Of a stretch of 64,000 nucleotides of DNA, positions 6,349 through 45,838 are shown piece by piece. The notes beneath the pieces were generated by a model that was given only the letters and a program-made list of their open reading frames with translations, was not told the origin of the DNA and made no database searches. The stretch covers positions 8,804,001-8,868,000 of the forward strand of contig JANJGN010000039.1 in the NCBI GenBank assembly GCA_026770705.1, written 5' to 3'. The position numbers were made by a program, and so were the translations under genes. Each line of letters begins with the position of its first letter. Position 1 is the first letter of the stretch. The DNA comes from Isurus oxyrinchus. Lineage: Eukaryota.

Positions 6349-7253
6349 TCAATGGGTTTTCAGCTGTGATTTGCATAATTTTACGCACAGTTTCACAAGA
6401 TACTTCATTCCGCTCCTCAGCTCCTCCCTAAACCTAGCCTGTGTCAGCACATAAATGAATGTATTTGTGCAGCAACTTAAGTCCCCTAGCATGAATCCAA
6501 CTGACTCAAGGTGATTTGCGCCAGAATTCGATGTAATTGTTACATGCAGAGAGATAAGATATATAACCGGAGTTGTCCAGAGCAATATAAAGCAGCCGGT
6601 TATACTGAAGAGTAAAATAATGGACTTTCTTCGGCTTTCTATTTCAGAGTCCGTGTGATCTTCTCCATTGCTGCAACTGCGGAGACCCCTGCGAATGTTA
6701 CTGGCTGCCAAAATATGTCTAGCCGTCAAAACATTTAGCAACAAGATTAGAATGAATGGAACACATGGTTTCAAGGTAAGGGTAAAAAAGGCAAATGCGG
6801 CCCATTCATCAGAAATGAAAAATGTCTGTTTTAGGACACAACCACGATTTACATTGTCCATTATTTCTGCAGGTTCAAGCGCAAAGTACCAGGGAATATT
6901 TATAAAAAAACTCAACATGCTCACCACTGATATGACAGCTACTGCTGTTGTCTCCGTGGAATATTTTTTTCGTAGCTTCTTACAACATATAACCACAAAA
7001 CGATCGAAGGTGAACATCACTGTTAACCAGAGAGACGCTGATGTGACTACATTGATCAGTGTCACATTTAGCTGGCACAGCGTGCTCATGGTCAAGAATG
7101 AAACAGCGAAATAAATATCCAGTGTATTCTTCAGTATGACTTCAGCACAAACAACCAGGAGATCTGCCATGGCCATGGCGATCATATAGTGGGTAATACA
7201 TTTGGAGAGGCCACACTTTCTTCGGGAAAGAATCACAATCGCAACCACATTAA
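6349..7253 (-). CDS. GPR139/GPR142-like class A GPCR, coding exon 2 (TM1 end to stop)
   Basis: Open frame with seven-TM pattern: NVVAIVILSR..CGLSKC, MAMADLLV, FTFDRFVVICC, NIPWYF, PCVPF, RRKSIILL, LSCCTNTFIY. Acceptor CTCTTCTCTTACAG at 7254+ follows a pyrimidine tract, phase 1. TGA at 6349-6351. Confidence 0.92.
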
Positions 7254-10200
7254 CTGTAAGAGAAGGACAGAGAAAGCAGGAGATTGATGACACAGAAGAA
7301 CTTTATTAATTTTCTTCCTGTTGTAGCAAAGGATTGTGCATTTGACCCAAATATGCCACAGTTAGCTTTCCAAGGTGAACATGTTCTAAATGTAAACTGG
7401 ACCTACTGAAAGTGCTTAGGGAAGAGAAACATTAGATGATAATTCGTCTTTTGGAATGAAAATCATCAATGTAGACTGGACAACTATTGTACAGTAAAGA
7501 TTGAGATTGCTGAGGGCGAATTTGACCCGAACAATTTGACTGCACACAAACGGCTTGGCATGGTGAATATTAAAAGGAAAATGGGTGGTGTAAAAATTCA
7601 ATTCATGTGTGTTGGTGCAAAGTGAAATGTGAAAGGAATGCACAACATAGAATCTGGGCCAAGTAAAATTATACTCCAGAAGAGGTAGACATGCATTTCG
7701 TGCTGGGCAGTCTATAGATGCGATAGGCACTGGGAAGGATTACTGTACTACAGGACTTACAGTTTGAAGATTAAATATTGCCCAGGGACACGAACATACC
7801 GTGAATGCAAGTGAAAGCAAAGATGGAAAGGTAAAAAAAAGCAGGAACATATAAGGCCACTGAGCTACATAAAAGACCAGCATAGATGAGGCCAAATGCA
7901 AGTTTTCACAAGCGTCATCACAGTGGCAGTACAATTTGAATCAATACAAGGTGACATTCTTAAGCAGGTTCCCAGTGAGAAGTTTTATTTGAGGATGAGA
8001 GCTGATTAGTCCAGTGTCTTAAGTCAGGCTGAGTAACGTGAGATTGATATGCTGGCTGGGCATTGTGCAGGATTATTTCAGATGAACACATTGCTAATGC
8101 ATTGCAGAAAATGTGAAGCAACATTGCTATGCAGAATGGGTACAGTCAGTGCTGATCAAGAGGGCAGTATAATGGCAGACTGGGACCGGTGACATGCTAT
8201 CAGATTGAGTGAGCAATAGTTATTGGCCATAGGGGCACATTTCTTGCAAAGCATAGTGAATGAGCAATTCGAAGATGTGCTTCTCGTGAGGACATAACTA
8301 GCATTTTGCTTCCGAGTAGGCCGGACAGAGTTCCCATTAATTGAACGGCTGCAGAACAAATCACTTTGTTGTGGAAAGGGCAGAAGGGAATCGTTTGTCT
8401 TTCAAGGACAGCATCAGTGATTTGAAAGGTGAAGCTGAAAATTTAATTTTGCTTGGCACCAAGTACAGAAGATCGTGGTAAAGATTGACTGTGATGGGCA
8501 CATCGATTTCAGTCTGTAGACTAATATGTGTTCAGAAAGGTGAAATTACAAGTTGTCGATTACCTGACGATAAAGACCTAGCACCTAACACATCCATGTT
8601 TAAATTAATATCCTCTAAAGCTTACTTCATTTCAGATTGGCCAGGCTCATAAAGTCCATGAATTTTAGCATTTGTTCATAAAATGCATGTTTCTTTTTTT
8701 TTTCCAAAATGCAGGAACCTTTTCAGAGAATTAGCGAAGTGATTCACTGCTGAATCACTATACAGAAGATTAACTTCAGACATTTATACTGATTACTGAT
8801 GAAAATAAGTGATCTATATAAGTCAAATGAAATTGACCTGAGACTCAGATAATCACGGTTGCATTATGATTCTGTTGTCTACTTAGTAAAGGTCCAGTTG
8901 AATTTTTAAGAACGGATTTGCTAAGTGAATCTCACTGAACGAATTTGTAGCTGCCAGATATGTAATAACTTGATGCACACGTTTATTAAATTACTTTTCT
9001 GCATTTCAAAGCACTTTAAATACCTCCAGCCTGAATTATTATCGAATGTAGGTAATCAGCACATTGCCGAAATTTTGTTTGTACTTCTGGTGGCGATGAT
9101 AGAGGATAAGATTCATGGCTCTGGAAAGGGTGCAGAATAGGTTTCCGACTGAAGACTCCGGTGAGATTCGGGAGACACAGATTAGGAAAGAAGATAATGC
9201 ACATTCTCAAAATAATGGGATGAATAGATATAGAGTTATTTCAAGTACCAGCTGTTCTCAAGGCTATGCAATATGGTTGCAGACTGAACGTAGACTTTTC
9301 GCAAAATTGAACTTAGGGAAACAAAAATGCATTGATGTCTATAAACAGGGTGGTGAAGTAACAGTTTGGATCATATTATTTCAGTAAGTTGTTCGTTAAT
9401 AATTCAGATGAACTCTAAATGAAGTAAGGCGAATTAGCCGGATAAAGATAAACAGTTTTTAACATTTCTGAATCAGATTGCAAGTTGGCAAGCTTTGACC
9501 ACAAAAAAAAAATCTATTCGTGTTACATACACAACCCAGTTTGGTAGCCTCCTGTTGACAATTCTCTAACTCGAATGCAAGCAGCAAACATTGATTGTCT
9601 TAATGGAGCTGTCAATGATAATCACAAACAGCCTTGGAAACGCCAGGTAATGGATAAAAAATAAAGTTTGAGTTTCTGTTGACCATGTAGGATTCACTGG
9701 AAAAGGTGGAAACATTATTAATCAAAGCTAGTTTGACACAATTGCAGCTGAAAATAAATAACAAAATAAAACAACTTAAAATAAATAACAAAAATGAAAA
9801 TTGAACTTCATTTACCCGATAACATTTACCCGAAATAATTAACTATGTGCTATTGTGAGTGATGATAAGATGGTTAGCCAAAATATCCTCATTTGAAACT
9901 GTACTGGTCAGCACTGTAAATAAGGAAACAATGTAAACAGTGCAGTAATTTAAACAATTATATATTGAAGCAACGAATGTTTGGACAAATTAATTTTCAA
10001 AACAATTATCCAATAAATTATCATTATATTCCAAGAATATTCCTCCGAATTAAACATTGAAATGCCCAAGGAATGAACTAACCATTATCTACCGAATGAA
10101 ATAGTCCCCAATCCAAAAGATTATCCACTACTTAGCTAGCAAATTAATTATACAGACATGAAATATATTATCAACATTATTCCCTGCTAAATAAACTAGA

Positions 10201-18384: not shown

Positions 18385-19350
18385 NNNNNNNNNNNNNNNN
18401 NNNNNNNNNNNNNNNNNNNNNNNNNNNNNNNNNNNNNNNNNNNNNNNNNNNNNNNNNNNNNNNNNNNNNNNNNNNNNNNNNNNNNNNNNNNNNNNNNNNN
18501 NNNNNNNNNNNNNNNNNNNNNNNNNNNNNNNNNNNNNNNNNNNNNNNNNNNNNNNNNNNNNNNNNNNNNNNNNNNNNNNNNNNNNNNNNNNNNNNNNNNN
18601 NNNNNNNNNNNNNNNNNNNNNNNNNNNNNNNNNNNNNNNNNNNNNNNNNNNNNNNNNNNNNNNNNNNNNNNNNNNNNNNNNNNNNNNNNNNNNNNNNNNN
18701 NNNNNNNNNNNNNNNNNNNNNNNNNNNNNNNNNNNNNNNNNNNNNNNNNNNNNNNNNNNNNNNNNNNNNNNNNNNNNNNNNNNNNNNNNNNNNNNNNNNN
18801 NNNNNNNNNNNNNNNNNNNNNNNNNNNNNNNNNNNNNNNNNNNNNNNNNNNNNNNNNNNNNNNNNNNNNNNNNNNNNNNNNNNNNNNNNNNNNNNNNNNN
18901 NNNNNNNNNNNNNNNNNNNNNNNNNNNNNNNNNNNNNNNNNNNNNNNNNNNNNNNNNNNNNNNNNNNNNNNNNNNNNNNNNNNNNNNNNNNNNNNNNNNN
19001 NNNNNNNNNNNNNNNNNNNNNNNNNNNNNNNNNNNNNNNNNNNNNNNNNNNNNNNNNNNNNNNNNNNNNNNNNNNNNNNNNNNNNNNNNNNNNNNNNNNN
19101 NNNNNNNNNNNNNNNNNNNNNNNNNNNNNNNNNNNNNNNNNNNNNNNNNNNNNNNNNNNNNNNNNNNNNNNNNNNNNNNNNNNNNNNNNNNNNNNNNNNN
19201 NNNNNNNNNNNNNNNNNNNNNNNNNNNNNNNNNNNNNNNNNNNNNNNNNNNNNNNNNNNNNNNNNNNNNNNNNNNNNNNNNNNNNNNNNNNNNNNNNNNN
19301 NNNNNNNNNNNNNNNNNNNNNNNNNNNNNNNNNNNNNNNNNNNNNNNNNN
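18385..19350. other. Assembly gap (966 N)
   Basis: Run of N; true size unknown. Confidence 1.
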
Positions 19351-19724: not shown

Positions 19725-20620
19725 CACAGAATCACAGAACCAGGAAGCGCAGAAAAGGCACTTCAGCCTATCGAGTCTGCACCGACACGTGAGAAACACC
19801 TGACTTTCCACCTAATCACATTTGCCACCATTTGGCCCATAGTCAAGAATGTTATGACGTGCCTGGTGCTCATCCAGTTACTTTTTAAAGGATGTGAGGC
19901 AACCCGCATACAACATCTTCCCAGGCAGCATCTTCCAGACCTTCACCACCCTCTGGGTAAAAAGGATTTCCTCGCATCCCCCCTAAACCTCCTGCCCAGC
20001 ATTTTGAAATTTTGTCCCCTCAAGACTGACCCTTCTAATAAGGGGAACAGCTGCTCCCTATCCAGCCTGTCCACGCCCCTCATAAACTTGTACACCTCTT
20101 TCAGGTCACCCCTCAGTCTTCTCTGCTCCAACGAAAACAACCCAACTCTATCCAACCTCTCTTCACAACTTAATTGTTTCATCCCAGGCAACATCCTGAT
20201 GAATATCCTCAGCACCCCCTGCAGTGCAATCACATCCTTCCTATAATGTGTCGACCAGAACTGCAAACAATACTCCAGCTGTGGCCTCAACAAGGTTCTA
20301 AACAACTTCAGCATTACCACCCTACTTTCGTAATCTCTGCCTCGATTGATAAGTGCAAGTGTCCCATATGTCCTTTTCCCCACCCCACTAACATGCCCTC
20401 CATCTTCAGAGATATATGGACACAGATGCCAACGTCCATTTTTTCTCAGAACCTCCTAGTGCCATGCCATTCATTGAATACTTCCTCGTCAAATTGCTCC
20501 TTCCAAAGTGTATCACCTCACATTTTTCAGGGTTAAATACCATCACCCACTTATCTGCCCATTTGATCATCCCATCTATATCTTCCTGTTGACCAAGACA
20601 CTAAACCTCACGATTAACCA
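19725..20620 (-). mobile_element. CR1 LINE 3' end (ORF2 C-terminus plus 3' UTR)
   Basis: ORF 19943..20383 LVRP-like LLRPQLEYCLQFWS...LFSLEQRRLRGDLKEVYKFMRG, typical of CR1. Confidence 0.92.
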
Positions 20621-22860: not shown

Positions 22861-23923
22861 GGTGCTCTGTTACAAAAGACATTGAAATTGCTGTCCCGTC
22901 CTAGCAGTGAAATGAAATTTCATTAAAATTTCACTGAAATTAATTTGCCCCAACTCCAACAGTACAATTCACCGTGACTCTACAACATGCCAGTTCACCG
23001 TCCCAAACCATTTTGTCCCTTTTTTGTGTGTGTGTGTGCAAGTGTTGTTGTCAAAAACATCTAATTAAAACTTGGCTTTTTCTGAACAGTTCCAGAAGCA
23101 TCTGCTATTGTCTATGCTTTCACAATCTAAGGCAGACATTCTGACTGAGCTCCAGTTTTGGTTCATTTCTAAATAACGTGGCTTCTTGCCTTCACTTGCT
23201 TTATCAGGAATATCCTAGGATCAAGACTGATAATTTGCATCACGGAATTAAGAGAAGACGAAGTACTTTGTGTTGTCTAGGGACTGTGTGTTATAAAAAA
23301 AAACAGTAAAACCAGCCCAGAACATTTGCCGTCAATATTGTTTTTTTCATTCATTCAGGGTATGTGGGCTTCGCTGTGTCGGCACAACATTTATTGCCCA
23401 TCTCTAGTTGCCCTTGAGAAGGTGGTGGTGAGCTGCCTTCTTGAACCGTTGCACTCCCGGTGGTGTGGTGTTTAGGAGGGAGTTCCAGGTTTTTGACCCA
23501 ATGATAGTGAAGGAACGGCCGATATATTTCCCAGTCAGGATGGTGAGTGACTTGGAGGGGAACTTCCAGGTGCCGGTGTTCCCATCTATCTGCTGCCCTT
23601 GTCCTTCTAGATGGTAGTTCTCGTGGGTTTAGCCTTTATCATGTGGCCGTTAAGACCGCCAGGTCAGGCAGCCAAGAGGAAAATCGTGGAAGAAATTTTA
23701 AACGCTGGCCGTTTAACATCCCCTGCTACTGATTTTATTAAGTTGTTCGGAAAAAATGTCCAATGGATTCTGTTAGGGTGCACGATTTTACACTGGCTAA
23801 GGGGCGTTTAGCACACAATCAGCTGGGAAGAATTTCCAAAGCTATTGATGTACTTAATTACATTAACACGCACATGGTTGTGTATTTAATCTTACACATG
23901 TTCAACGTTTTATTGCTCTCCAG

Positions 23924-24019
23924 GGACCACTTTCCCTCTAATTGCTGTCCTGGGGTGTGCAGTCGAAATAATCCTGGCAACGTTTGTGGCAATGACGGCG
24001 TGCTTGTTCGCCAGAAGAA
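23924..24019 (+). CDS. Immunoreceptor-like gene: transmembrane exon (xTTFPLIAVLGCAVEIILATFVAMTACLFARR)
   Basis: Acceptor TTTTATTGCTCTCCAG, donor GTAAGT, 96 nt, phase 1/1. About 25 hydrophobic residues followed by basic stop-transfer residues. Confidence 0.8.
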
Positions 24020-24454
24020 GTAAGTGTTCGTCAAGAAAAAAAAAAATAACTACCATTTTTCATGAAAAAAGGAGGAAACGTTGGCGGGAACCTGCAAACA
24101 ACCCTAAACTCAACTGCAGCATTAAAATTGTCAGCAGCTATGGATGACTACATGTTGAGGAATGAGGCCTTGTCTTAATTGAAAGGTCACTTTCATGCAG
24201 AGGATGTGAGTAAAGCAACTGGAACATCACCCTCATTACTGGCGGACAACAGTGACCGTCTCGATTCCACGCCCCTTCCCTTTCGTCTCACCCCATCGAA
24301 TGTCCCCACTCCCTGGGTACTTACGGTTTGCTCTCACCTGCCCTCTCTGGCTTTGTCTTCAGAAACGGCCACCGCTTCAACTCCTGGTAAACCGGCGTAG
24401 AGTGTAATTTGCGGCAGGGGTCATAAACCACACGCCCAGGCTTGTGGCACGGCC

Positions 24455-24780
24455 TCAGATTCCACAACGGCAGCTGCTGGAGTTTGAGGTAAACCTATTA
24501 ATAATTTTAGAATTTTAAGTCAGTGTCAGTACTGCTATCCAGGAATCTACAATCGATTACAATTTATATATGTATATATTTTAAAATGGTCCAGTAATGC
24601 TCTTTAGGGAAGCAACTCGGCCATCGTTGCCTGATCTCGCCTACATGTGACTCGTGAACACAGCAATATTGCTAACGCTTAAATGTCCTCTGAAATTGCT
24701 TAGACATTCGGTTCAAGAGCAATGAGGCATGAGCAACAAACTCAGGCATTGCCAGGGAAAACGACATCCCATGGGAGGAT
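24455..24780 (+). mobile_element. SINE (shark DeuSINE/SacSINE-like) copy
   Basis: GGCAGCTGCTGG..TAATG.TCTTTAGGGAAG..CCTACATGTGACTC..CCTCTGAAAT..GGGCAA-type tail. Reverse copy at ~29220-29560. Confidence 0.6.
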
Positions 24781-25059
24781 GAGTTGAAAGGAGAAATTTG
24801 ACACGAAGCCTCAATATATTTTGACCTCAACATTCAAATGGACATACAAACTTACATCTGACACCTTCCCTTGGCCGAATATTGCATTGAGCTTCTCATT
24901 CGGAAGTGTTGTATTGACAGCAGCTTTTTCAATTTCTCTGCAGGGATATTAAGCTGAACAAGCAGTACTCCGGTCTGTCAGCTCCAAACCAAAAGTCAAA
25001 AATTTAGGCCAAGCTCGTAACATTTTTTCTTGTACCAGGATAGGATATCGATATCAGAG

Positions 25060-25625
25060 TTGAAAGGCCAACTCTCCACTACTGCCTTCTACCGCCCCCT
25101 GGATCATGGCACTCCTTCATAAAATGAAGCCACCCGATCTAGGGCCGTCACTGACCTGATCTCCTGTGCAGATCTCCCCTCCATGCCTTCCAATCACATG
25201 GCCCAACCTCCGTAAATAGTCAGTATCTACCTCTACCCCAATCTAAAAAGGCGACGTATCTGGTTTCATCCTATTGTTTCAAACTACTCCTAACCAACTG
25301 TGCTTAATTATTCCTATCTCGATTCTATTTATTTCTTATACATCACTCCCTACCTACATCCATTGCTCTGCTGATGCCCTCCGTCTCTTCAACAGTTTCT
25401 GGCTCTGCTTCCGTTTCGCCATGGACGTCCAATCACTCTGTAGGTCAATTCGCCACCAGGGCGGCCTGTGAGCCCTCCCCATTCTTTCTCCTTGTATGGA
25501 GGACCAACAAATCTCCGTGACGTTAAACAACATTTGCTTCCACTCCACTTACCTCCTTCAAATTAAACATGTTGCTCTGGGCACTGAGTGGGACCTAGCA
25601 ACAGCTTCACTTCGCTGTTTTGCAG
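25060..25625 (+). mobile_element. Degenerate Penelope-like element RT
   Basis: FAMDVQSLCRSIRHQGGL (cf. TMDVQSLYTSIPH..GL) and NNICFHSTYLLQIKHVALGT..GPS (cf. NNFSF...YLQ.KGVAMGTRMGPS). Confidence 0.75.
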
Positions 25626-25664
25626 AGGAGGCGATAGCATAGTTGCATTGTTAGTGGACTTAGT

Positions 25665-26190
25665 AATCTTTGGTCCCCTTTATTCTAGAATGAATACACT
25701 GGCATTGGAGGCAGTTCAAAAGAGATTCAATGGGCTGATTCCTGGGATGGAAGTGTTGACTCATCGAGAACGGCTAAAGAGTTTAAGCCTTTATTCATTC
25801 GAGTTTAGAAGAATGAGGGGTGATCTTACTGAGACCTGCAAGATTTTGAGGGGGCTTGACAGTTTCAATGTTGAGAAGATGTCTCCACTCGTGGAAGAAT
25901 CTCAAACTAGGAGACATAGTTACAGCATAAGGGGCCACTCAATTAAAACTGAGCTGCATGTGGATTTCGTCTCTCAGAGGGTAGTGAATGTTTGGAATTC
26001 TCTAGCCTATTGAGCTGTGGAGTCTAAACCGTTGAAAGTATTTAATGATGATGTAGATAGATTTTTGAAATATTGGGGAGTTGAGGGCTATGAGGAGCTG
26101 GCACGAAAGAGGAGTTGAGGCCTGGGGCTAATCAACCATGATATTATTTAATGGCTCGGGTGGCTAGAGGGGCCGAATGGCCTACCTCTG
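25665..26190 (+). mobile_element. CR1 LINE 3' end
   Basis: ORF 25588..26013 ALEAVQKRFNGLIPGM...LYSFEFRRMRGDLTETCKILRG...SQRVVNVWNSL, plus 3' UTR GGGGCCGAATGGCCTACCTCTGCTCCT. Confidence 0.9.
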
Positions 26191-27214
26191 CTCCTTTTTT
26201 GTGTTCTGTCCTACACCCTAATACAAATCATCCCTTTTGTTCCTCTTCACGGCCTTCTGTGATTTCACCTGCGGAGAGAGAAACAGAGATAACATTTCGA
26301 GTCGAATATGACTCATCTTGCACACTGATCCTGCTGTTTCCCCTTCCCTACTGCAGATAGCTCTTTGTTCCATTCGCCAATATACAGATGTCAAACTGTT
26401 CCCCCTATTCATCCGGTCGTTTCACGTTGGTGTGCCACGTTCCATTTTCAACAATCTGAAGACTGAAACATTCCTAGTCGCACAGCCACATATCACAGCT
26501 GTGCCTACTACAGAATCCACTCCATGCCATTCGCCTTCATCACTGATGGTGGTGCTTCAGCGAAAGATTTCAGAACTTAACTAGCTAACTGGAAGCTTCC
26601 GAAAAGTTAAAGCCATCTACAAAATGCATCACTTCGAGAACGCTTTTGATCCATTCCTTCTGTAAAACAATTCAGGACCACTTCCATCACCCAAAGAAAG
26701 GCGAGAACTCGAAGTCTTCTCTTTATTTCTCTCTGTTTTTTATACTTTTCTTGTCAAAACTGATAACACCATTAATAAAGGCGGACCTGATGTGTTCAAG
26801 AGCGAAGGGGTAATAGAGAGAGTGATAAGTGGGAAGGCTAGAAAGAGGCAATTAGATCACGTGAAGTGTCAAGATCTGAATTATAAACACCAACACTACA
26901 TTACGTGTTTCAACGCTATTTATGTGTGTAGCCCAAGTGCTCTGGAGCACACGGGATATTTTACTGCCTTCAGGCACTGAATTTGTAAGTGGAAGCTATT
27001 GATACTGAGACGCAAGTAGAGGAAACTGGGTTGGAGGATATTATCGGTTAATTTCATGGTTTCCTACACCATAGCATGTGTATTAGTCACATATCCTCAT
27101 TACATTAGGAGCAAATTCATAAAACCTTTCAATGCATTAAATCCATAGAATATTGAGCATTTGGAAAACTTTATCAAGTGCCTTACATTTTTCCCACTTT
27201 TTGCTTTATTGCAG

Positions 27215-27242
27215 GAAAGAGAAAAAGACTAAATATTGAGAG
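27215..27242 (+). CDS. Immunoreceptor-like gene: cytoplasmic micro-exon 1 (RKRKRLNIE)
   Basis: TTTTTGCTTTATTGCAG | 28 nt | GTAATG, phase 1/2, in frame with the TM exon. Confidence 0.75.
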
Positions 27243-27414
27243 GTAATGACATTGCTTTAGTTCTCCAGTATTTATAGTTGTGAGCAAAATGCACCACACG
27301 ATATTACTCAATTCAGTAAAAGTTAAATATTTTCTTAAACTTGTGCATTGGAAAATAAACATGATTTTGGGGGGAATACTTCTAACAAATCAGTAACTTT
27401 CTTTCATTTTAAAG

Positions 27415-27467
27415 GTGTACAGCGTCTGCAAGTGGAATGGCAAATCAGCAAGATGGTGATCTCCTGT
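27415..27467 (+). CDS. Immunoreceptor-like gene: cytoplasmic exon 2 (RCTASASGMANQQDGDLL)
   Basis: TTTCTTTCATTTTAAAG | 53 nt | GTAAGT, phase 2/1. Confidence 0.75.
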
Positions 27468-27850
27468 GTAAGTATAGTAATGTTGACATTGACTGTATTT
27501 CTTGATCAAGGATCATTGCTCTTTCTGACACTGTCCGTCACGGTTGTCTGAATGGCTTATGTAGTTATTTCCAATATTCTCCCTTCTATATTTAAATAGA
27601 ATTTATTTGGTAGAACTAGTATAGAATTAGAAACATTTCTAAAGATTGTTGATCACTTGGTTGCAAAAAACATGAATCACTGGGGACCAAATTTTTCATG
27701 GGTCATCAAACACACTGCATCCATTTTAGAGTGTTATACTACACACCCAGTATTCTGTTCTATTAAAGTCGTGGTTACAGGAAAACTGGATGATATGGGA
27801 ATCGAATTATTCGTGGGCTGGCACATCAAACACACGGGATCTATTTAAAA

Positions 27851-28058
27851 GTGGAAAAGACTCAGCAGGTCTGACAGCATCTGTGGAGAGAAAGGGACAG
27901 TTAACGTTTGGAGTCAGTATGTCTCTTCTTCAGAGCTCTGGAAAGAGCCAAACGCATTCGAAAGGTTCGCTTTTTCTTTCTCTCCATGGATACTGTCAGA
28001 CCTGCTCAGTGTTTGTCAAGCATTTTCTATTCTTGTTTCAGATCACCAGTATCCGCAG
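27851..28058. mobile_element. Palindromic (fold-back) Penelope terminal-repeat dimer
   Basis: Arms CTCAGCAGGTCTGACAGCATCTGTGGAGAGA / TCTCTCCATGGATACTGTCAGACCTGCTCAG are inverted about CAGAGCTCTG (27931-27940). Confidence 0.8.
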
Positions 28059-28244
28059 AGCAGGAGTGTTTGACTGCCTGCAAGTCATGTGTTTGAAATG
28101 GAATTGAAATTCACGTCGTTCCTATAAAGAACAACAAATCTGTAACACCGCTTAATGTCAATAGACAAGGAACTTGCTAGACCATTTACGCTCCATGAAA
28201 GCATGCAATAATTGAATCAAAATGCACTTGTCTTTCCTTTTCAG

Positions 28245-28282
28245 ATCTTAACCAGAGTGGTTCCTCCAACCTGGAGATGAAC
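28245..28282 (+). CDS. Immunoreceptor-like gene: cytoplasmic exon 3 (YLNQSGSSNLEMN)
   Basis: TCTTTCCTTTTCAG | 38 nt | GTAAGC, phase 1/0. The T|AT junction creates a Tyr. Confidence 0.75.
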
Positions 28283-28346
28283 GTAAGCACCTATTTTGAA
28301 TATTGCTATTATTCTCAGCCAACTCACGGAAAAATGGACGCAAACA

Positions 28347-28390
28347 TATGATATTCTGAGTGGGAGGTATGATATTCTGAGTGGGAGGTA
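28347..28390 (+). repeat. 21-bp perfect tandem duplication TATGATATTCTGAGTGGGAGG x2
   Basis: Read directly. Confidence 0.95.
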
Positions 28391-29219
28391 GAGAGTGAGG
28401 TATAGGGGGCAAAAAGTGAACAGGGAAACCTGGAATTGCAGATCAAGGAAGAGAGAATGAATATTGAGACAGAGGAAAAGGGTGGGAGACCGAGCAAGAG
28501 CGGGAAAAAAAAAGAAAAGCCTGAAATTTGGGAACACAAGGAAAGACAGGAGGCGCGAGAGTGACTTAGAGAGTGACATAGGGAGGGACAAAAGAACAGG
28601 GGGCAGGCTGAGGAAGGGTGAGTGAAATTCAAAAGGAACATTCGATAGAAGAAATGAAACAATAAATCAGTGCATGATCGCACCATTGTTGAAGCGAACA
28701 GCCAAGGAGGAGGCCGTTCTGCCCATCGTCCAAGGGCTATCAGCCTCACTTACTCCTCCATGCTAGAACCGTGCCCATATCACTGTAAATTCCTCATTCA
28801 AAATATTTTTTGAAACATTGCACGGGGTTGCCTTCAATCACGTTATCAGATGGTATGCTCCAGATTCTAACAACTCTCTGAATGAAAAACAAGGTAACAA
28901 CAATCTATGCTCTTCTGCCCTCCAGTTTTATTTAATTCTCCAAATAAAGTCCACTCCCTGCTGTTGTAGGATGGCCCAGTAGTTAGCGGGAATATTATCT
29001 TCCCTCTATCGACTATGTTGAAAATGTCATCGCCGTGGAAACATATCTCAGTTAAACTCATAGTTCGAAGCAATGACTCATTTGTTTTAGTGTATTTTAT
29101 CTCCAAGGAAGCCCCACGTCCCCTTAATTTACTAATGAACGCACTTATGCTTTACCCTTTTTCTGAGGTCATTAACTCCTTCCTGAAGTCTGGTGTTTAG
29201 GTTTCAGAAATAAGTTTTT

Positions 29220-29560
29220 CATGGGTTGTGGGTGCCATTATCAAGGCGTCCCGAAATCACCCTTAAAATGAGCGGCTTGCTTGGCCATTTCAGAGGGCAG
29301 GTAAGGGCCAATCACTTTGCTTTTAGGTCTGGACTTACAGGTGGGCCAGACCAGATGAGGGCGTCAGATTTCCTTCCCTCGAGCACATGCGTGAACCTGA
29401 TGGGCTGCTAGAACAAACAATGGTAGCTTCATGAGGCCACATTCCATTTCCACATTTATTAAGTGAACTTGGATGAGCCTGATCAGTTAATTCAGTAAGT
29501 GTTAATCAAGGCTTCTGAATTACCTTTCCAAGCACTTGGTCACTAGGCCACTGCCTCCCC
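29220..29560 (-). mobile_element. SINE copy (same family as 24455-24780)
   Basis: GGCCATTTCAGAGGGCAG..GGTCTGGA..GGCCAGACCAG..CAGATTTCCTTCCCT is the reverse complement of that SINE core. Confidence 0.6.
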
Positions 29561-29805
29561 TGAATTGCCCACAGTGCTCTAACCAATGATATTATAAATC
29601 TGCAAAATGTCATCTTCGTAGTTATATTCCTCCCGTCATGTCCTTATGACTCAATCCAAATTATATGTTCTTCAAATCAATTTATTAGACTGCTCTGTGT
29701 CATGGAAAGAACATATAGCTTTCAGGAATTTAAATTTAGCTTGCGCCTGTTGCGATCACCTTGTTCCCTTTGCTTTTATTATTTCCTGTGTGTTATTCAT
29801 CGCAG

Positions 29806-29931
29806 GGATTCTATTCTGAAGTGCTAGAGGACGACAATGGGGAGATAAACTATGCATCGTTGAACCTGGAAGCCCTCAGTTGGAAAGATGGGGCCTCCAC
29901 CTGTGAACCAGGCGCCAACTTCCCAGCTAAA
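29806..29931 (+). CDS. Immunoreceptor-like gene: ITIM exon (GFYSEVLEDDNGEINYASLNLEALSWKDGASTCEPGANFPAK)
   Basis: Acceptor TTATTCATCGCAG, donor GTAGGG, 126 nt, phase 0/0. INYASL fits the ITIM consensus [ILVS]xYxx[LV]. Confidence 0.8.
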
Positions 29932-30140
29932 GTAGGGAAAAAAATTATATTTCTGTTCTGTGGGTGCTTGATTTGTGTGATGAAAAAGTGGGCGTAAAGA
30001 GGCAGAAGGAAAACTAAAAGGGGGAAATGTCAAAAAGTTTGTAGCTGGGGGTAAAGGAAAATAGAGCAGGACCCTAGGAAATACAAAGAAAATAAAAATG
30101 ATGCAGAGACAGAGAAAAAACGCAGAGGACATGGAGACGC

Positions 30141-30168
30141 AGAGAGAGAGAGAGAGAGAGAGAGAGAG
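30141..30168 (+). repeat. (AG)n microsatellite in a purine-rich intron
   Basis: Read directly. Confidence 0.95.
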
Positions 30169-30473
30169 CGTGGGAGAGGGAAAAGGTGAGTAAGAGAGAC
30201 AGCGAGAGAACATGGAGGTGGGGTGTCGAGGATGTGAGAGTGAGAGAGGGAGGGAATCAATGAGAGAGACAGAGACAGAACATGAGGCTTGGGGAGCGAG
30301 AGCGAGAGATAGCATGGGAGAGGGAGAACGTGAGTGAGAGAGACGGGGAGAGAACATCGGGGTGAAGTTGAATGGATTGCCAGATTAAGGGAGGAGAGCA
30401 TGAGGTTGATAAAAGGCGAATCGAGAGAAAGGTGATCTTACCCACTTGTGCCATTGTGTTTCTTTCCTTGTAG

Positions 30474-30557
30474 AAGAAGCGTTCTGAATTAGCAAAGAGC
30501 GAGTTTCAAGATGTCACCTGCGCACCTGTGAGAGTTGACTCTGAGAAACCGCAATGA
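30474..30557 (+). CDS. Immunoreceptor-like gene: terminal coding exon (KKRSELAKSEFQDVTCAPVRVDSEKPQ*)
   Basis: TGTTTCTTTCCTTGTAG acceptor, phase 0, TGA at 30555-30557, AATAAA at 30766-30771. Confidence 0.7.
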   Translation, partial: KKRSELAKSEFQDVTCAPVRVDSEKPQ

Positions 30558-30765
30558 ATGGACACTGCACCGCGTTAGACTCTGTAAGCTGTTCCGCCTG
30601 CATGTTACCAAAACACTTTGACTAAGTGCGAATATCGCCACTTACGGGACCTGTATGAACTGTGGTACTTAAAGATTTTTTTGAGAGGTTATAAATCTGC
30701 ACGCATATCAGCTTGAAGCACTTTTTCATGTTGCAATATATTCTACGCTCTTTGAATGTGTTTAT

Positions 30766-30771
30766 AATAAA
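30766..30771 (+). terminator. Putative polyadenylation signal of the immunoreceptor-like gene
   Basis: AATAAA ~210 nt after the stop, followed by T/G-rich sequence. Confidence 0.45.
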
Positions 30772-31175
30772 CTTTGAATGAACTTTTTCTATATTTGGTG
30801 GCAATAATCCAGATTGAAATTATTCAAAAAGTTACAATTTCAGTTTCGCTTTGATACAAATATCCAAGTTGGAACCATAAGCATAATTTGTTCGTACGCA
30901 ATTGTCCATCTGATCGCATCAGCAGAATAGTTAGCAATTAGGTTCTTACAATAAATGCTCATTTAGTAGCACAGGACTAGAGTACTGCTGCTAAAATAGA
31001 CCCACTGTCACAGCTTTTCGCCTTACGCTCATCAGGATAGCTCGTGACAAATTACCAACAGGAAAGGAGGAGTGATAATGTATACTCCAACTCTCACAGC
31101 AGTCACACATCTAACGCCAGGCCGCCTCGTTTTGAACACACAGCTGAATTATTCCCTGTGTGTCATTCATCGCAG

Positions 31176-31277
31176 AGACTCTATTCTGAAGTGCTAGCGA
31201 ATGACAATGAGGAGATAGACTATATTTCGTTGAACCTGGAAGCCCTCAGTCGGAAAGAAGAGGCCTCCACTGTTTAA
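31176..31277 (+). CDS. Duplicated ITIM exon, possible alternative terminal exon (RLYSEVLANDNEEIDYISLNLEALSRKEEASTV*)
   Basis: Paralogue of 29806-29900 including the acceptor ATTCATCGCAG; open to TAA. Confidence 0.55.
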   Translation, partial: RLYSEVLANDNEEIDYISLNLEALSRKEEASTV

Positions 31278-34259
31278 TATTAAATCTTCCAGCCTCACGC
31301 ACAGTCATCTTAATTCAGCGGATGAAAACATGATTTTCAATTATGAATTTTTTTTAAAAAATCACTCTTTAAGAATACTGGCTGCTGAGTCATCGGAGAA
31401 ATGTGGAAGCATATATCTCTGTGAGTCAATGGGGACATCGCTCCAACAATGGCACTGGGCTGAATGAGCATTAAAACTATCCGCAAGATGAGATATTTCA
31501 TTATTTTCAGTGGATTTGCTGAGAGTTAGTATCAGGATGCTGGAGTTGAAGTGTCCTTATTCTAATCTCCGAGACTGTGCTGCTTTCATATTCACACACA
31601 ATCGGGTAGTGACATCACTCACTGAACTTATTGGGGCAGAAGGCGTTTCACTTCCTGCTGCATCTCATTTACCTGAGTGAAGGCTTCAGGCCAGAGCTCC
31701 ACTCGGTGGTCGCTTGCTGAACGTCGTCTAGGGTGCCTTGAGGTGTATTTAAGTGGTGCAGTGTAGCTGAAAACGCAGCTGCACTTATTGCAGGAGGCTG
31801 AATCAGAGTTTCCTTGTATGGATTGTCTGTAAAAGGAAAAGGAGCAATGTGGAAGAGTGAAGGCGCTGACGGCAGTGTTGCAGTTCTTTAGTCCAGGGCT
31901 CTGCAGGAGGACCGAGGCCACTGTTCTGTTGTGGGCTGTGCAGGAGAACATGAAACAGAACGATCAGGAGGAAATGATTGCAGGGGGCGAAGGAGGGATG
32001 TTCGCAGAGTTTCTCCTCGAGGAACTAAAAGCGTGTTACTCGATGTGAGACACCATTGTAGAGTCACTAGGACAGAGAAAGAAGACAAACGGCTTTTCCA
32101 TCAATGCAAGTTCCTGGGCAATAGATGTAGCCCCATCCTCCGCCCTATTCCCATGTCCTGCATGTTAATTTCCACCAAACAATGTTTATTTGATATCATG
32201 ACTATACCTGCTTCTATATTTAAAAGCAGCAAATTCCCAATCATTACCATCTGCTGCATCAAAGTTATTGTCCCCATCACCCTTACACACACCCTATGCC
32301 TACGCCTCAGTAACTTTTCACCTAAAGTCAAACTGAGGAGAACATACACAAGGCTGGAGTGTGGAACGAAAGCTGCTCGTGATATTCGAATCAGCACGTA
32401 AAAATGTTACAGTTATATTAGGAAAAGCACGGTTGGCGTAAGCAGTGTTGGTCAGTTCAAAACTGATAATGATGTTCCTGTCAATGAAACTAATCAGGTA
32501 GCGGACACGCTGAATGGTAACCATGTTTCAGTTATTGAAGTTGAGGAATAGATCAGCCTGTCAGAGATCCCATGGAAACTATTCCTGAATCAGGTGCAGG
32601 AATTCAACAAAGTTAATGTGAACAACAATAATATTAATAGACAAATTATAGACACATGGGAGGGGAAAATCTCCAAGACCAGAAGTTTTATTCCTAGGGT
32701 GTGAAAGGAAGTAAATGGGAACGTTGTAGATGCCTTAATCATAAATGTAACATTTTTCTCCACTCCTTTCACATAAAAGGAAAGTGACGGGGCAATCCCG
32801 TAAGATAGAAATAAGGAGGCTTTTTTTTTTTCACTGAAAGAAACACGCACCATTCGAGTTTTCATCCTTAAAGGCCAGTGGAAGCAGAACTTCTCAATAA
32901 TATTTTAAGGCAGAACAAGATAAATTGCTGGGAGGCAAGATGGTTGAAATTTTATCAATGGTAGGAGCGAATGTAGAGATGATGATATGGTCAGGTCAGT
33001 CTTTATATTATCAATTGTGAAGAAGTCACGAGGGGCCGAGTGGACTACTGTTCCTAATTCGTATCTTCATATGTTCGCATGTGTTATGTGATGGGGAGGG
33101 AAATCTGCTGCAAAGCTTGGAATCACCAATACGTTTTCACCTTGTTTAGCGACAAACACAAGCAGGAATAGAAACCACAGAGAGGTTCATATGACAACGG
33201 GGGTTATAAATGCTGAGTTAGTGACATTGAACATGTTCAGCATGCTTGTTGGGATTCTGAGATCGTGTTTTCCTTCGGACGAAATAAGACGACAATAATC
33301 TTGTCATAAGATGGTAGACATTTGTTGAGGAGGGAGGTGGGGGGAGAGAAAGAGAGAGTGAAATGCCGCTAGACGGAGTGTAACTTTATCATTTGCAGTA
33401 AGATTTTTCAAATGTAACTTTATTTTTCAACTCCTGCATCTGGTTTAACTTTTATTTGTCTGTAGAGCATTTTAACTTAATTTTATATATTCGCTCATAA
33501 TTTAATTGTGTACTTTATTTTTCCTTCCATTTCGACCCATTCCTGAGCATAATTATTTCTTTCATTTTATCGTTCCTGCTTTTCCTGTCATTGTACTTAC
33601 TGTTGAGTTTTGCCTTAAGCCCTGAATTCTAGGCTATCCAATCTCGTAGAGACCAGCCTTCCTTCTAAGTTCTGGTGAAATAGCTTGCTCCTTTTTAAAT
33701 ATAATTTTACAATCATTATGGTTATTAATCCTAATTTGCTTGAAAAAATGTCTTCGATTCTGTTCTCTATGGTTCAGCTTTTTAGCACATACTCATTTAC
33801 GCTCAAAAGCCTTTTTGCTTGACAGTGTTTTTAGTTTCAAATATGCTTCTGCACTGGTAGTTCTGTGTTGCTGAATCTGTTCTCCATGTATTACTTCTCC
33901 TCCATTGTTTTGATCATCTTTTTAGTATTTCATACTGCTGTGCTCCCTCTCTGATCATCCACATGTAATAGTTGAACGTCATATGTTGCATTTAATGGAG
34001 CCCATCATTAACCTTTTCGTAGAATTGTCGAAAATTACAACACGGCGTCTTCACAGGCCAAAAATGAAACGTCCAGCTTCATCCCAATTTCAAACTCAAT
34101 CTGTAGCCCTGCTGTTTACAGCACTTGAGGTGTATATCAATACATTAATTGGGTTGTGGGTTTTGTTCCTCTGCTGCCTTTCCGGGCAGTAAGTTCAAGG
34201 CACCCACATACCTCTGGGTAAGAAGAAAACATGCCTTTTTTTAAAGCAATCCTCTTACC

Positions 34260-44009: not shown

Positions 44010-44913
44010 TCAATGGGTTTTGAGGTGTAAATTGCATAGTTTTGCGCTCAGTTTCACAAGGTACTGCCTTCCGCTCTTCAGCTCCACCCTAAACCTAGCC
44101 TGTGTCAGCACATAAATGAATGCATTTGTGCAGCAACTGAGGTCCCCTAGCATGAATCCAACTGACTTAAGATCATTTGCGTCAGAATTTGAAGTGATTG
44201 CTACATGCAGAGAGATAATATATATAACAGGAGTTGTTCAGGGCAATATATAGCTGTCAGTTATACAGAGGAGTAAAATAATGGACTATCTTCGGATTTC
44301 AATTTCACAGTCCTTGTGGTGTTCTCCATTACTGCAACCGATGAGAGCTCTGCAAATTTTACTGTCTGCCAAAATACGTCTCACCGTCAAAACATTTAGC
44401 AACAAGATTAGAATGAAAGGAACACATGGGGTCAAGGTAAGGTTAAAAAATTCAAATGCGGCCCATTCAGCGGAAATGAAAAATGTCTCTATTAGGACAC
44501 AACCACGATTTACATTGTCCATTATCTACACAGGTTCATACGCAAAGTACCGTGGAATGTTTATCAAAAATCTCAAAACACTCACCACTGTTATGACAGC
44601 TACCGCTGTTGTTTCAGTGCAATATTTTTTCGCAGTTTCTTACAACATATGGCCACAAAACGATTGAAGGGAAACACCACTGTTGACCACACAGAGGCTG
44701 ATGGGACTACATAAATCAGTGTTATAGATAGATGGCACACTGTGCCCATGGTCAAGAACAAAACACGAAAATACATATCCAGCGTATTCTTCAGAATGAC
44801 TTCAGCACAAACAACCAGGAGATCCGACACGGCAATGGCGATCATATAGTGGGTAATACATTTGGAGAGGCCACACTTTCCTCGGGAAAGGATCACAATC
44901 GCAACAAAATTAA
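44010..44913 (-). pseudogene. GPR139-like GPCR pseudogene, exon 2
   Basis: 904 vs 905 nt in copy A: 1-bp loss in an A7 run (44625-44630). AAG->TAG at 44286-44288. DRF->NRF. Acceptor and terminal TGA are retained. Confidence 0.88.
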
Positions 44914-45838
44914 CTGTAAGAGAGGGATAGAGATAGCAGAAGATAGCGACACAGATGAACATGATTATTTTCTTCGTGTTGCAGCACAGGATCGTGCACT
45001 TCACCCAAGTATGCACAGACTGCTTTCTGAGGTGAGCATGTTCTAAATGTAAACTGGACCTAGTGAAAGTAGATAGGATAGGGAAACATCAATTGATAAT
45101 TCGTCTTTTGAAACGAACTTATTCAATGTAAACTGGACAACTAATTTTCAATAAAGATTGATATTGCTGAGGGCGAATGTGACCTGGACAATTTGAATGC
45201 AAACAAGCAGCTAGGCGTCGTGAACATTAAAAAGTTAAATAGGAGGTGTAAGGAGTCAATTCACTTGTGTTGGCACAAAGTGAAGTGGGAAGTTAATGGG
45301 CAAAATAGAATCTGGGCCATGTAGAGTTATACTCAGGAAGAGGTAGTGGTGCAATGCGTGCTGGGTGATCTATAGATGTAAATAAGTAATTGGAAGGATT
45401 ACTGGGCTGCAGAACTTACAGCTTGAAGGTAAAACATTGCCCAGTGGCACGAACATACTCTGAATGCTTGTGAGGGAAAAGATGGAATGATAAAAATGCA
45501 GGAACACGCAATGGTCACTGAGCTACAAAAAAAGACCAGCATAGATGAGCCCGATTTCAAGCTTATACCGGCGTCATCACAGTGGCATTACAATGACACT
45601 AAGTAAAAGGTGATGTTCTTATGCAGTTTCCCAGGGAGAAGTTTTATTCAGAGATAAGAACTGATCAATCATGAGCTTTAAGTCAGATTGAGTAACATGA
45701 GATTGATTTGCTGGCTGGACATTGTGCAGGATTATTTCAGATGAATGCATCGCTAATTCATTGCAGAAAGAGGTAAAGACACATTGCTATGCAGAATGGG
45801 TGCTGTCAGTGCGGATCAAAAGGGCAGTTTAATAGCGG

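What the first reader, a model, noticed from the sequence alone, without database searches (positions are those of the whole stretch)
23924..30557. Hidden ITIM-bearing type I receptor tail assembled from six short exons inside a GPCR cluster
Seen: six exons (23924-24019, 27215-27242, 27415-27467, 28245-28282, 29806-29931, 30474-30557), each with canonical AG/GT sites and pyrimidine tracts. They join in phases 1-1-2-1-0-0 into a stop-free ~140 aa product: xTTFPLIAVLGCAVEIILATFVAMTACLFARRRKRKRLNIERCTASASGMANQQDGDLLYLNQSGSSNLEMNGFYSEVLEDDNGEINYASLNLEALSWKDGASTCEPGANFPAKKKRSELAKSEFQDVTCAPVRVDSEKPQ*. The ORF track misses five of the six exons in their coding frame. Established: a phase-1 TM exon followed by short cytoplasmic exons with [ILVS]xYxx[LV] motifs is the layout of Ig-superfamily inhibitory receptors (CD22/Siglec, FCRL, CD300, LILR). 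Inference: an unannotated, probably chondrichthyan, inhibitory immunoreceptor interleaved with an expanded GPR139-like array.
Basis: partly seen in the sequence, partly recalled or inferred. Interest (0 to 1): 0.85.

Follow-up and report, generated by a model that had tools for sequence, protein, structure and literature searches.

The report
Shark inhibitory Ig-receptor tail exons
The six short exons are real: they encode the membrane anchor and inhibitory signalling tail of a shark immune-type receptor whose two-Ig relatives are already machine-annotated in other sharks, but the outer half of this copy is not in the window.

Summary
Observation confirmed. All six + strand exons (23924-30557) have AG/GT sites and read in the stated phases to a stop at 30555-30557. 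Searched alone, exon 5 found one true relative among 1.84 billion representatives: XP_078390326.1, 'immunoglobulin superfamily member 1-like' of basking shark, 371 aa. Its residues 231-371 match all six exons in order and it ends at the same residue. A catshark protein, LOC119955052, has the same tail.

Spliced contigs in 3 of 4 runs of the same species label skip the predicted introns. They differ by about 8-13% in exons 1 and 5, so they come from a close paralog, not this copy.

The relatives carry two Ig domains whose predicted fold is closest to OSCAR, LILR and GPVI. No Ig exon was detected anywhere in the window. This copy is therefore either a whole gene with an intron over 23.9 kb or an orphaned 3' half.

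It keeps one canonical ITIM; the family's second tyrosine motif reads Cys here. This is a new member of a known kind. The scan has noted many ITIM Ig-receptor genes in this genome. The joined model was never searched.

The parts
23924..24019 (+). Exon 1 of the chain: phase-1 exon encoding a few ectodomain residues, the transmembrane helix and the start of the basic stop-transfer stretch. It has a Glu inside the helix where both relatives have Ala.
   Evidence: AG/GT sites. 76% identity to P0003 residues 231-264. Profile hit E 1.4e-9. The paralog's contig piece 23920-24020 ends at the predicted donor.
27215..27242 (+). Exon 2: 28-nt micro-exon encoding the basic juxtamembrane stretch.
   Evidence: AG/GT sites. 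8 of 9 residues match P0003 264-272, not significant alone (E 12). The paralog's contig carries 25 letters between exons 1 and 3. By my hand alignment these, with the shared edge letters, make a 28-nt version of this exon with 3 differences.
27415..27467 (+). Exon 3: 53-nt cytoplasmic exon.
   Evidence: AG/GT sites. 16 of 17 in-exon residues equal P0003. Profile E 3.4e-6. Contig pieces 27413-27467 in X1 and X2, and the joint 27467->28245 with GT..AG.
28245..28282 (+). Exon 4: 38-nt cytoplasmic exon. With the last base of exon 3 it completes a Tyr codon, giving Y-L-N-Q (a YxN motif).
   Evidence: AG/GT sites. 10 of 12 residues equal P0003 (E 0.61 alone). Delimited by joints 27467->28245 and 28283->29810 in X1-X3.
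29806..29931 (+). Exon 5: phase 0-0 exon with Y-S-E-V and the canonical ITIM I-N-Y-A-S-L.
   Evidence: AG/GT sites. 69% identity to P0003 303-344. Profile E 7e-14. Contig pieces 29810-29899.
30474..30557 (+). Exon 6: last coding exon, with stop TGA at 30555-30557. The family's second motif V-T-Y-A is V-T-C-A here.
   Evidence: AG acceptor. 74% identity to P0003 345-371, ending at the same residue. Profile E 1.3e-6. This junction was not covered by the laid stretch.
30766..30771 (+). AATAAA polyadenylation-type signal about 210 nt after the stop. A second one lies at 30950-30955.
   Evidence: Read from the sequence. Its use is not shown.
31151..31277 (+). Short diverged copy of the exon-5 acceptor region plus exon. 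The exon part (31176-31277) reads in phase 0 through Y-S-E-V and I-D-Y-I-S-L to S-T-V and a TAA stop. It is either a possible alternative last exon or a relic.
   Evidence: 88% nt identity over 91 nt and 22 of 30 aa. The 25 nt before the AG are 92% identical, and the flanks beyond are at background. dN/dS about 1.3 from 3 synonymous and 13 non-synonymous differences. 77% identity to P0003.
6349..7293 (-). Context: intact 314-aa rhodopsin-type GPCR ORF, GPR139-like, lying between the window start and the tail exons.
   Evidence: Pfam 7tm_1 E 8.7e-20. The best solved-structure matches are GPR139 chimeras, E 8.2e-11.
44013..44947 (-). Context: broken copy of the same GPCR, about 76% aa identity, with 3 stops and a frame change.
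   Evidence: tblastn of the GPCR ORF against the window.
18385..19350 (.). Run of N, 966 bases, 4.6 kb upstream of exon 1.

Best explanation
The six exons are the 3' half of one paralog of a shark gene family. They encode the transmembrane helix and a roughly 115-residue cytoplasmic tail. The family encodes type I receptors with a leader, two LRC/FcR-like Ig domains, one TM helix and an ITIM tail. It is annotated as XP_078390326.1 (IGSF1-like) in basking shark and as LOC119955052 in catshark.

Shown: the exon chain, its collinear homology to those proteins, the same splice junctions in a close paralog's spliced contig, and one canonical ITIM.

Inferred from what is established for ITIM receptors: when the receptor is clustered beside an activating receptor, a Src-family kinase phosphorylates the I-N-Y-A-S-L tyrosine. 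SH2 phosphatases (SHP-1, SHP-2 or SHIP) dock there and damp the activating signal. The Y-L-N-Q (YxN, Grb2-type) and Y-S-E-V tyrosines may add other SH2 partners.

Not resolved: whether this copy is still joined to Ig exons. My odds are about 55% for a whole gene, with ectodomain exons more than 23.9 kb upstream or in the N run and the GPCR gene nested in the intron. I give about 40% for an orphaned 3' half left by partial duplication.
For: Splice sites and frames are as claimed.
Searched alone, exon 5 gave 6 proteins at E<=0.001 among 1.84 billion. One is a vertebrate receptor, P0003, with 71% identity over residues 303-343 of 371. P0003 is XP_078390326.1 of Cetorhinus maximus.
P0003 residues 231-371 align in order to all six exons and end at the same residue.
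A P0003+P0007 profile hits only these exons and the exon-5 copy in the six-frame translation.
P0007 (Scyliorhinus) shares 54% identity over 95% of the tail.
One contig each in X1, X2 and X3 (729, 733 and 1014 nt) lies on exons 1, 3, 4 and 5. Its joints are 24020->27413, 27467->28245 and 28283->29810, and about 400 nt of it lie 5' of the TM exon, off the laid stretch.
The relatives' ectodomain has Pfam Ig_3 and Ig_2. In the model, the Ig part has pLDDT of about 70-90. The top PDB fold hits are OSCAR, LILRB4, LILRB2, GPVI, FcgRIIa, NKp46 and KIR.
Against: No Ig or leader exon was found in the window:
- no C..W..YxC pattern in any frame;
- 0 Ig families among 113 upstream + strand open segments;
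- no tblastn hit better than E 0.8 for P0003 residues 1-230;
- no profile hit better than E 2.4 for profile positions 1-240.
No contig of 99% or more was seen on this copy's own exons. The spliced contigs carry 12-13 other letters in 101 (exon 1) and 7-8 in 90 (exon 5), so they are a paralog's. No RNA holder was listed.
The runs' RNA label is a guess. An intron-less contig could in principle come from a retrocopy in DNA.
This copy has lost the second conserved tyrosine (Cys) and has a Glu in the TM helix where both relatives have Ala. Both could be signs of relaxed constraint.
ITIM function is inferred from a motif only.
Confidence: 0.85

Rival explanations
1. Orphaned 3' fragment. A partial duplication copied only the TM and tail exons of a two-Ig receptor gene into the GPCR cluster. 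Nothing is spliced onto exon 1, the piece is not translated, and it is young enough to look intact.
For: No Ig exon was detected in 23.9 kb upstream or anywhere else in the window. A GPCR gene on the other strand, repeat-derived ORFs and a gap fill that space. A close paralog exists, only about 2-13% different per exon, so the duplication is recent. The second tyrosine motif is lost and a Glu sits in the TM helix. No contig of this copy's own sequence was seen.
Against: All 11 splice sites, all six frames and the stop position are intact over about 425 nt. By my rough estimate, which no call computed, that would be unlikely after long neutral drift. Long introns are common in large shark genomes (general knowledge). 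The runs available were small, 70-116 million letters of contigs.
Confidence: 0.4
2. Ig-less membrane adaptor. An unrecognised short 5' exon (start codon plus signal or short ectodomain) in the window splices to exon 1, giving a small transmembrane adaptor-like protein with tyrosine motifs.
For: No Ig exon was found in the window. The tail has YxN, YxxV and ITIM tyrosines, a mix known from transmembrane adaptors (recalled, not tested).
Against: Both relatives with this tail have two Ig domains. The paralog's contig has about 400 nt 5' of the TM exon, enough for an Ig exon. No candidate 5' exon was identified, and I did not scan for one.
Confidence: 0.04
3. Chance: open frames flanked by AG and GT that a reader could chain together in any AT-rich vertebrate intergenic DNA.
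For: Exons 2 and 4 are too short to be significant on their own (E 8.1 and 2.1; E 12 and 0.61).
Against: Four exons hit the family profile at E 1e-6 to 7e-14, in order. There is a full collinear match to two annotated shark proteins. The same junctions appear in spliced contigs.
Confidence: 0.01

Closest known systems
XP_078390326.1, 'immunoglobulin superfamily member 1-like' [Cetorhinus maximus] (P0003), an automatic RefSeq model
   Same: The TM helix and whole tail are collinear with the six exons: 69-94% identity per exon, the same C-terminal end, and the same I-x-Y-A-S-L-N ITIM and Y-S-E-V.
   Different: P0003 has a leader and two Ig domains, and none is in the window. It has V-T-Y-A where the window has V-T-C-A, Ala where the window has Glu in the TM helix, and no Tyr at the exon 3/4 junction.
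LOC119955052, uncharacterized protein [Scyliorhinus canicula] (P0007)
   Same: The same tail family, with 54% identity over 95% of the P0003 tail. The I-T-Y-A-S-L-N ITIM is conserved.
   Different: It has a second canonical ITIM (V-T-Y-A-S-L), Gln in place of the Tyr of Y-S-E-V, and a longer stalk.
Mammalian LRC and Fc receptors (OSCAR, LILRB, GPVI, KIR, NKp46, FcgRII)
   Same: The relatives' two-Ig ectodomain model is closest to these: OSCAR E 1.7e-12, LILRB4 2e-11, GPVI 8e-10. Inhibitory members are monomers with ITIM tails (PMC6557307, passage seen).
   Different: Only 16-24% identity in the fold alignments. No sequence hit to any solved structure at E<=0.01. Orthology and synteny were not tested. 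A 2014 survey reported no C2-only LRC homologues in sharks (PMC4016189, passages seen).
MDIR (modular domain immune-type receptors) of skate
   Same: A multigene family of activating and inhibitory Ig receptors in a cartilaginous fish (PMC3031540, passages seen).
   Different: MDIRs are described there as having V-type, CD300/TREM/pIgR-like domains. P0003 and P0007 show only Ig_2, Ig_3 and ig matches and no V-set match at E<=0.01. I had no MDIR sequence to compare.
Teleost leukocyte immune-type receptors (LITR); recalled, not tested
   Same: Fish receptors with C2-type Ig domains resembling FcR and LRC, in paired activating and inhibitory forms (recalled).
   Different: No sequence comparison was made here.

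Membership tests
Shark two-Ig ITIM receptor family (XP_078390326.1 / LOC119955052) | TM helix and cytoplasmic tail homologous and collinear over the whole tail | tested here: met
   all six exons in order. Four are significant alone (E 7e-14 to 3e-6). The C-terminal end is the same.
Shark two-Ig ITIM receptor family (XP_078390326.1 / LOC119955052) | Conserved membrane-distal ITIM I-x-Y-A-S-L-N | tested here: met
   I-N-Y-A-S-L-N in exon 5; I-T-Y-A-S-L-N in both relatives.
Shark two-Ig ITIM receptor family (XP_078390326.1 / LOC119955052) | Second C-terminal V-T-Y-A tyrosine motif | tested here: not met
   The window reads V-T-C-A-P-V. The relatives read V-T-Y-A-P-M and V-T-Y-A-S-L.
Shark two-Ig ITIM receptor family (XP_078390326.1 / LOC119955052) | Leader plus two Ig-domain exons upstream of the TM exon | tested here: inconclusive
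   None in the window.
Shark two-Ig ITIM receptor family (XP_078390326.1 / LOC119955052) | Transcribed and spliced as predicted | tested here: inconclusive
   Junctions 1-2, 2-3, 3-4 and 4-5 are seen only in a paralog's contig, in 3 of 4 runs that come from one sample. Junction 5-6 was not covered. No contig of this copy itself was seen.
ITIM-bearing inhibitory receptor (functional class) | [S/I/V/L]xYxx[I/V/L] in the cytoplasmic tail of a type I membrane protein | tested here: met
   There is one match, I-N-Y-A-S-L. The hydrophobic helix is followed by a run of Arg and Lys, which puts the tail inside the cell.
ITIM-bearing inhibitory receptor (functional class) | Phosphotyrosine-dependent recruitment of SHP-1, SHP-2 or SHIP, with inhibition | not testable with these tools
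   Needs biochemistry.
LRC / FcR-like receptors (LILR, KIR, OSCAR, GPVI, FcgR, FCRL) | Tandem C2/I-type Ig domains with the LRC/FcR fold | tested here: inconclusive
   Met for the relative P0003. It cannot be tested for this copy, whose ectodomain is not in the window.
LRC / FcR-like receptors (LILR, KIR, OSCAR, GPVI, FcgR, FCRL) | Orthology or conserved synteny with the LRC or the FCR locus | not tested
   No tree or synteny analysis was made. The neighbours here are GPR139-like GPCRs.
Siglec / CD22 | N-terminal V-set domain (sialic-acid binding) | tested here: not met
   No V-set match in P0003 or P0007 at E<=0.01. The fold hits are LRC and FcR. This was tested on the relatives, not on this copy.
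CD300 / MDIR | V-type CD300/TREM/pIgR-like domain | tested here: not met
   No V-set match in P0003 or P0007. This was tested on the relatives only, and no MDIR sequence was on hand.

The most novel reading that the evidence does not exclude
This copy is a live, tail-variant member of a shark family of C2-only, LRC/OSCAR/LILR-like inhibitory receptors. It has one ITIM, a YxN site, an acidic residue in the TM helix, and an optional short tail ending in S-T-V through the duplicated exon at 31176-31277. The family would show that LRC/FcR-type ITIM receptors predate bony fish, against the 2014 survey that found none in sharks. It would also show that small acceptor-plus-ITIM-exon cassettes of about 125 bp can be copied on their own to remodel receptor tails.
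Probability: 0.25. Interest if true: 0.55.

Novelty: new member of a known kind. Interest (0 to 1): 0.35.

Why it matters
The finding adds a correctly delimited tail to a shark receptor family that so far exists only as machine-made gene models with borrowed names. The tail comprises the TM helix, a 28-nt micro-exon, an ITIM exon and the last coding exon.

The relatives' Ig domains fold most like OSCAR, LILR and GPVI. The family therefore bears on when LRC/FcR-type paired receptors arose. A 2014 survey (PMC4016189, passages seen) placed that at the base of bony fish.

For this particular copy the value is modest. Its ectodomain is not in view, its own expression is not shown, and the scan has already noted many ITIM Ig-receptor genes in this genome.

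Tried and rejected
Ectodomain exons. None of these found an Ig exon in the window:
- A regex for the Ig C..W..YxC pattern in six frames found nothing.
- A Pfam scan of all 113 + strand open segments of 45 aa or more ending before 24020 found 0 Ig families. It returned 10 unrelated families with one member each, at E 0.0064-0.098, which I take as noise.
- tblastn of P0003 and P0007 and a profile of both against all open segments of 20 aa or more on both strands found only tail exons.
- One weak match, P0007 residues 18-38 at 443-505 (E 3.2), was rejected. It would run across the expected leader/Ig1 exon boundary.

Expression. The look-up of sequencing runs on 29700-31400 listed no RNA holder.

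Homologue breadth. The search with whole P0003 found only P0003 itself, 1 of 3663 candidates. The alignment search added a Heterodontus three-Ig protein with an unrelated short tail and a marsupial IGSF1-like protein, 4 of 6941 candidates.

The other 5 of the 6 hits to exon 5 are long repeat proteins. I take them as spurious from their sequences and did not look up their sources.

Selection on the exon-5 copy. dN/dS is about 1.3 on 33 codons, too few to decide. Homology stops sharply about 25 nt before the AG and right after the copy's last codons. The duplicated unit was therefore short, and its survival is not evidence of constraint.

Solved structures. There was no sequence hit for P0003 at E<=0.01.

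Repeat ORFs at 25588-26010 (+) and 19946-20383 (-) have no Pfam family but are 34% identical to each other.

Literature. Searches (15 of 28 listed; 4 of 4; 15 of 373; 15 of 21; 3 of 3; 1 of 1) listed no title on this family. That is as far as 'not in print' goes. What I saw of each paper:
- PMC4016189, PMC6557307, PMC11372145 and PMC3031540: passages only.
- PMC4701786: its 'shark' matches were the surname Sharkey.
- All others: the listing only.
Supplements were not opened.

The joined six-exon model was not built, translated or searched. Each exon was handled apart.

Full report
WHAT IS THERE. Each follows a pyrimidine-rich stretch and AG, and exons 1-5 are followed by GTAAGT, GTAATG, GTAAGT, GTAAGC and GTAGGG. 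Translated one by one in the claimed frames they have no stop. The split codons fit phases 1/1/2/1/0/0 by hand. The frame closes at TGA 30555-30557, and an AATAAA lies at 30766-30771. Exon 1 encodes a hydrophobic helix followed by a run of Arg and Lys. Exon 5 holds Y-S-E-V and I-N-Y-A-S-L. As the operators required, I never built, translated or searched the joined model; everything below was done exon by exon.

IS IT MORE THAN CHANCE. Yes.
- Exon 5 alone (42 aa) was scored against 1.84 billion representatives and gave 6 proteins at E<=0.001. Five are long repeat proteins that I take as spurious from their sequences.
- The sixth, P0003 (371 aa, 71% identity over residues 303-343), is XP_078390326.1, 'immunoglobulin superfamily member 1-like' of Cetorhinus maximus.
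- tblastn of P0003 against the window places its residues 231-371 on all six exons in order. Identities are exon 1 76%, exon 2 8 of 9, exon 3 16 of 17 in-exon residues, exon 4 10 of 12, exon 5 69% and exon 6 74%. Protein and window end at the same residue.
- A tail-restricted search found a second relative among 230 candidates: P0007, LOC119955052 of Scyliorhinus canicula, with 54% identity over 95% of the tail.
- A profile of the two proteins, run against every open segment of 20 aa or more in six frames, hits only exon 5 (7e-14), the exon-5 copy (6.5e-10), exon 1 (1.4e-9), exon 6 (1.3e-6) and exon 3 (3.4e-6). Exons 4 and 2 are in place but not significant alone (E 2.1 and 8.1).

RNA. No RNA holder of 29700-31400 was listed. 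Five small runs came up only by species label. Four of them were laid on 23900-29899 at 90% likeness.
- In X1, X2 and X3, which are one sample, one contig each (729, 733 and 1014 nt) lies on 23920-24020, 27413-27467 and 29810-29899. X4 shows none of this.
- The joints are 24020->27413, 27467->28245 (GT..AG) and 28283->29810.
- The 25 letters between exons 1 and 3, together with the shared edge letters, align by hand to the 28-nt exon 2 with three differences.
- Four of the five predicted junctions are thus used in a spliced molecule. The fifth (29931->30474) lay outside the stretch.
- The contig is not this copy. It has 12-13 other letters in 101 in exon 1, 1-2 in 55 in exon 3 and 7-8 in 90 in exon 5. 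Its TM codons read Ala-Ala-Ala-Ile-Ile-Leu-Ala-Ile, as in P0003, where the window has Val and Glu at two of the Ala positions and Thr at the last residue. It is a close paralog's transcript.
- About 400 nt of each contig lie 5' of the TM exon and off the stretch, room for an Ig exon.
- Caveats: the runs' RNA label is a guess, and an intron-less contig could also come from a retrocopy. No contig of 99% or more lay on this copy's own exons.

WHAT THE FAMILY IS. P0003 and P0007 have a leader, two Ig domains (Pfam Ig_3 and Ig_2; P0007 also matches the HIDE1 Ig model), a stalk, a TM helix and this tail. They have no V-set match at E<=0.01 and no sequence hit to any solved structure.
- A model of P0003 built from a three-row alignment has mean pLDDT 61.7. 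The Ig part is at about 70-90, and the tail is below 35, as expected for a disordered tail.
- Foldseek against the PDB ranks OSCAR first (E 1.7e-12). LILRB4, LILRB2 D3D4, GPVI, LILRB1, FcgRIIa, NKp46 and KIR follow, at 16-24% identity.
- A Heterodontus relative, P0008, shares the ectodomain as three Ig domains but has a different TM and a short tail. Tails are therefore swapped within the wider family.

THE MISSING HALF. No leader or Ig exon was detected in the window.
- There is no Ig cysteine-tryptophan pattern in any frame.
- There are 0 Ig families among 113 upstream + strand open segments.
- No tblastn hit is better than E 0.8 for P0003 residues 1-230, and no profile hit is better than E 2.4 for profile positions 1-240.
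- The 23.9 kb upstream hold a GPR139-like GPCR ORF on the other strand at 6349-7293 (7tm_1 E 8.7e-20; GPR139 best at 8.2e-11). They also hold repeat-derived ORFs and a 966-base N run that I left alone.

Two readings remain.
- A whole gene with an intron over 23.9 kb that contains the GPCR gene: about 55%. In its favour, all 11 splice sites, all frames and the stop position are intact.
- A 3' half orphaned by partial duplication: about 40%. In its favour are the recent paralog, the loss of the family's second tyrosine motif (V-T-C-A against V-T-Y-A in both relatives), a Glu in the TM helix where both relatives have Ala, and no transcript of its own.

HOW IT WOULD WORK. Inference from the ITIM paradigm (named in PMC6557307, passage seen): a Src-family kinase phosphorylates the tyrosine of I-N-Y-A-S-L when the receptor is brought next to an activating receptor. 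SHP-1, SHP-2 or SHIP bind through their SH2 domains and dephosphorylate the activating pathway.
- Only this motif fits [S/I/V/L]xYxx[I/V/L], and it is invariant in P0003, P0007 and the exon-5 copy's I-D-Y-I-S-L.
- Y-S-E-V has Gly at -2 and is Gln-S-E-V in catshark.
- Y-L-N-Q, a YxN Grb2-type site, is made by the codon split between exons 3 and 4. By my reading of the X3 joint letters it also occurs in the expressed paralog. It is absent from P0003 and P0007.
- None of this was or could be tested here.

THE DUPLICATED EXON. At 31151-31277 lies a copy of the exon-5 acceptor region and exon. It shares 88% nt identity over 91 nt and 22 of 30 aa with exon 5. It reads in phase 0 to S-T-V and TAA.
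- Homology is 92% in the 25 nt before the AG and falls to background beyond that and right after the last codons. At this divergence (dS about 0.15), co-duplicated flanks would still be recognisable, so the copied unit was only about 125 bp.
- dN/dS is about 1.3, from 3 synonymous and 13 non-synonymous differences in 33 codons. This shows no sign of constraint, but there is too little data to decide.
- The copy is closer to P0003 (77%) than exon 5 is (69%).
- It could be an alternative last exon spliced from exon 4, or a relic. No read bears on it. Another first-stage note, s1-897785, raised the same idea.

KNOWN OR NEW. The family is in RefSeq as automatic models. I found no paper on it in six searches (listings only, as counted in Tried and rejected).
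- A 2024 single-cell study mentions genes labelled fcgr1a-like, fcrl3 and fcrl5 in bamboo-shark B cells (PMC11372145, one passage seen).
- Skate MDIRs are a described cartilaginous-fish family of activating and inhibitory Ig receptors, but with V-type domains (PMC3031540, passages seen).
- The scan has already noted many ITIM Ig-receptor genes in this genome, one of them 1.6 Mb away on the same piece, and many GPR139-like clusters.

Verdict: a real, correctly read tail of a new member of a known kind, with its completeness open.

Noticed in passing
window 31151-31277 (+): A copy of about 125 bp of the exon-5 acceptor plus ITIM exon, ending in S-T-V and TAA. Homology stops sharply on both sides, dN/dS to exon 5 is about 1.3, and it is closer to the basking-shark protein than exon 5 is.
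   Followed up: partly
window 23965-23967 (+): A Glu codon in the middle of the TM helix, where both relatives and the expressed paralog have Ala. An acidic TM residue is unusual for an inhibitory receptor. It may reflect relaxed constraint or a partner-binding change.
   Followed up: no
window 6349-7293 (-), 44013-44947 (-), 62638-62931 (+): One intact GPR139-like GPCR ORF; a copy at about 76% aa identity broken by 3 stops and a frame change; and a remote fragment at 32% identity.
   Followed up: partly
window 25700-26300, 27700-27900, 29100-29300: These intron stretches have very high summed contig depth in all four runs, up to about 20,000 at 27700-27899, with many loose ends. They are interspersed repeats. 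The ORF fragments at 25588-26010 (+) and 19946-20383 (-) are 34% identical to each other but match no Pfam family.
   Followed up: partly
P0008 (Heterodontus francisci, IGSF1-like isoform X1): It has the same kind of ectodomain with three Ig domains, but a different TM helix and a short tail without the ITIM exons. This hints that the wider family swaps tails, as paired receptors do.
   Followed up: no
window 28324-28749 (-) and 29824-30401 (-): Long minus-strand ORFs rich in Ser-Leu and Pro lie inside introns 4 and 5. They look like translations of simple CT-rich repeats, not genes.
   Followed up: no
window 18385-19350: A 966-base run of N, 4.6 kb upstream of the TM exon.
   Followed up: no
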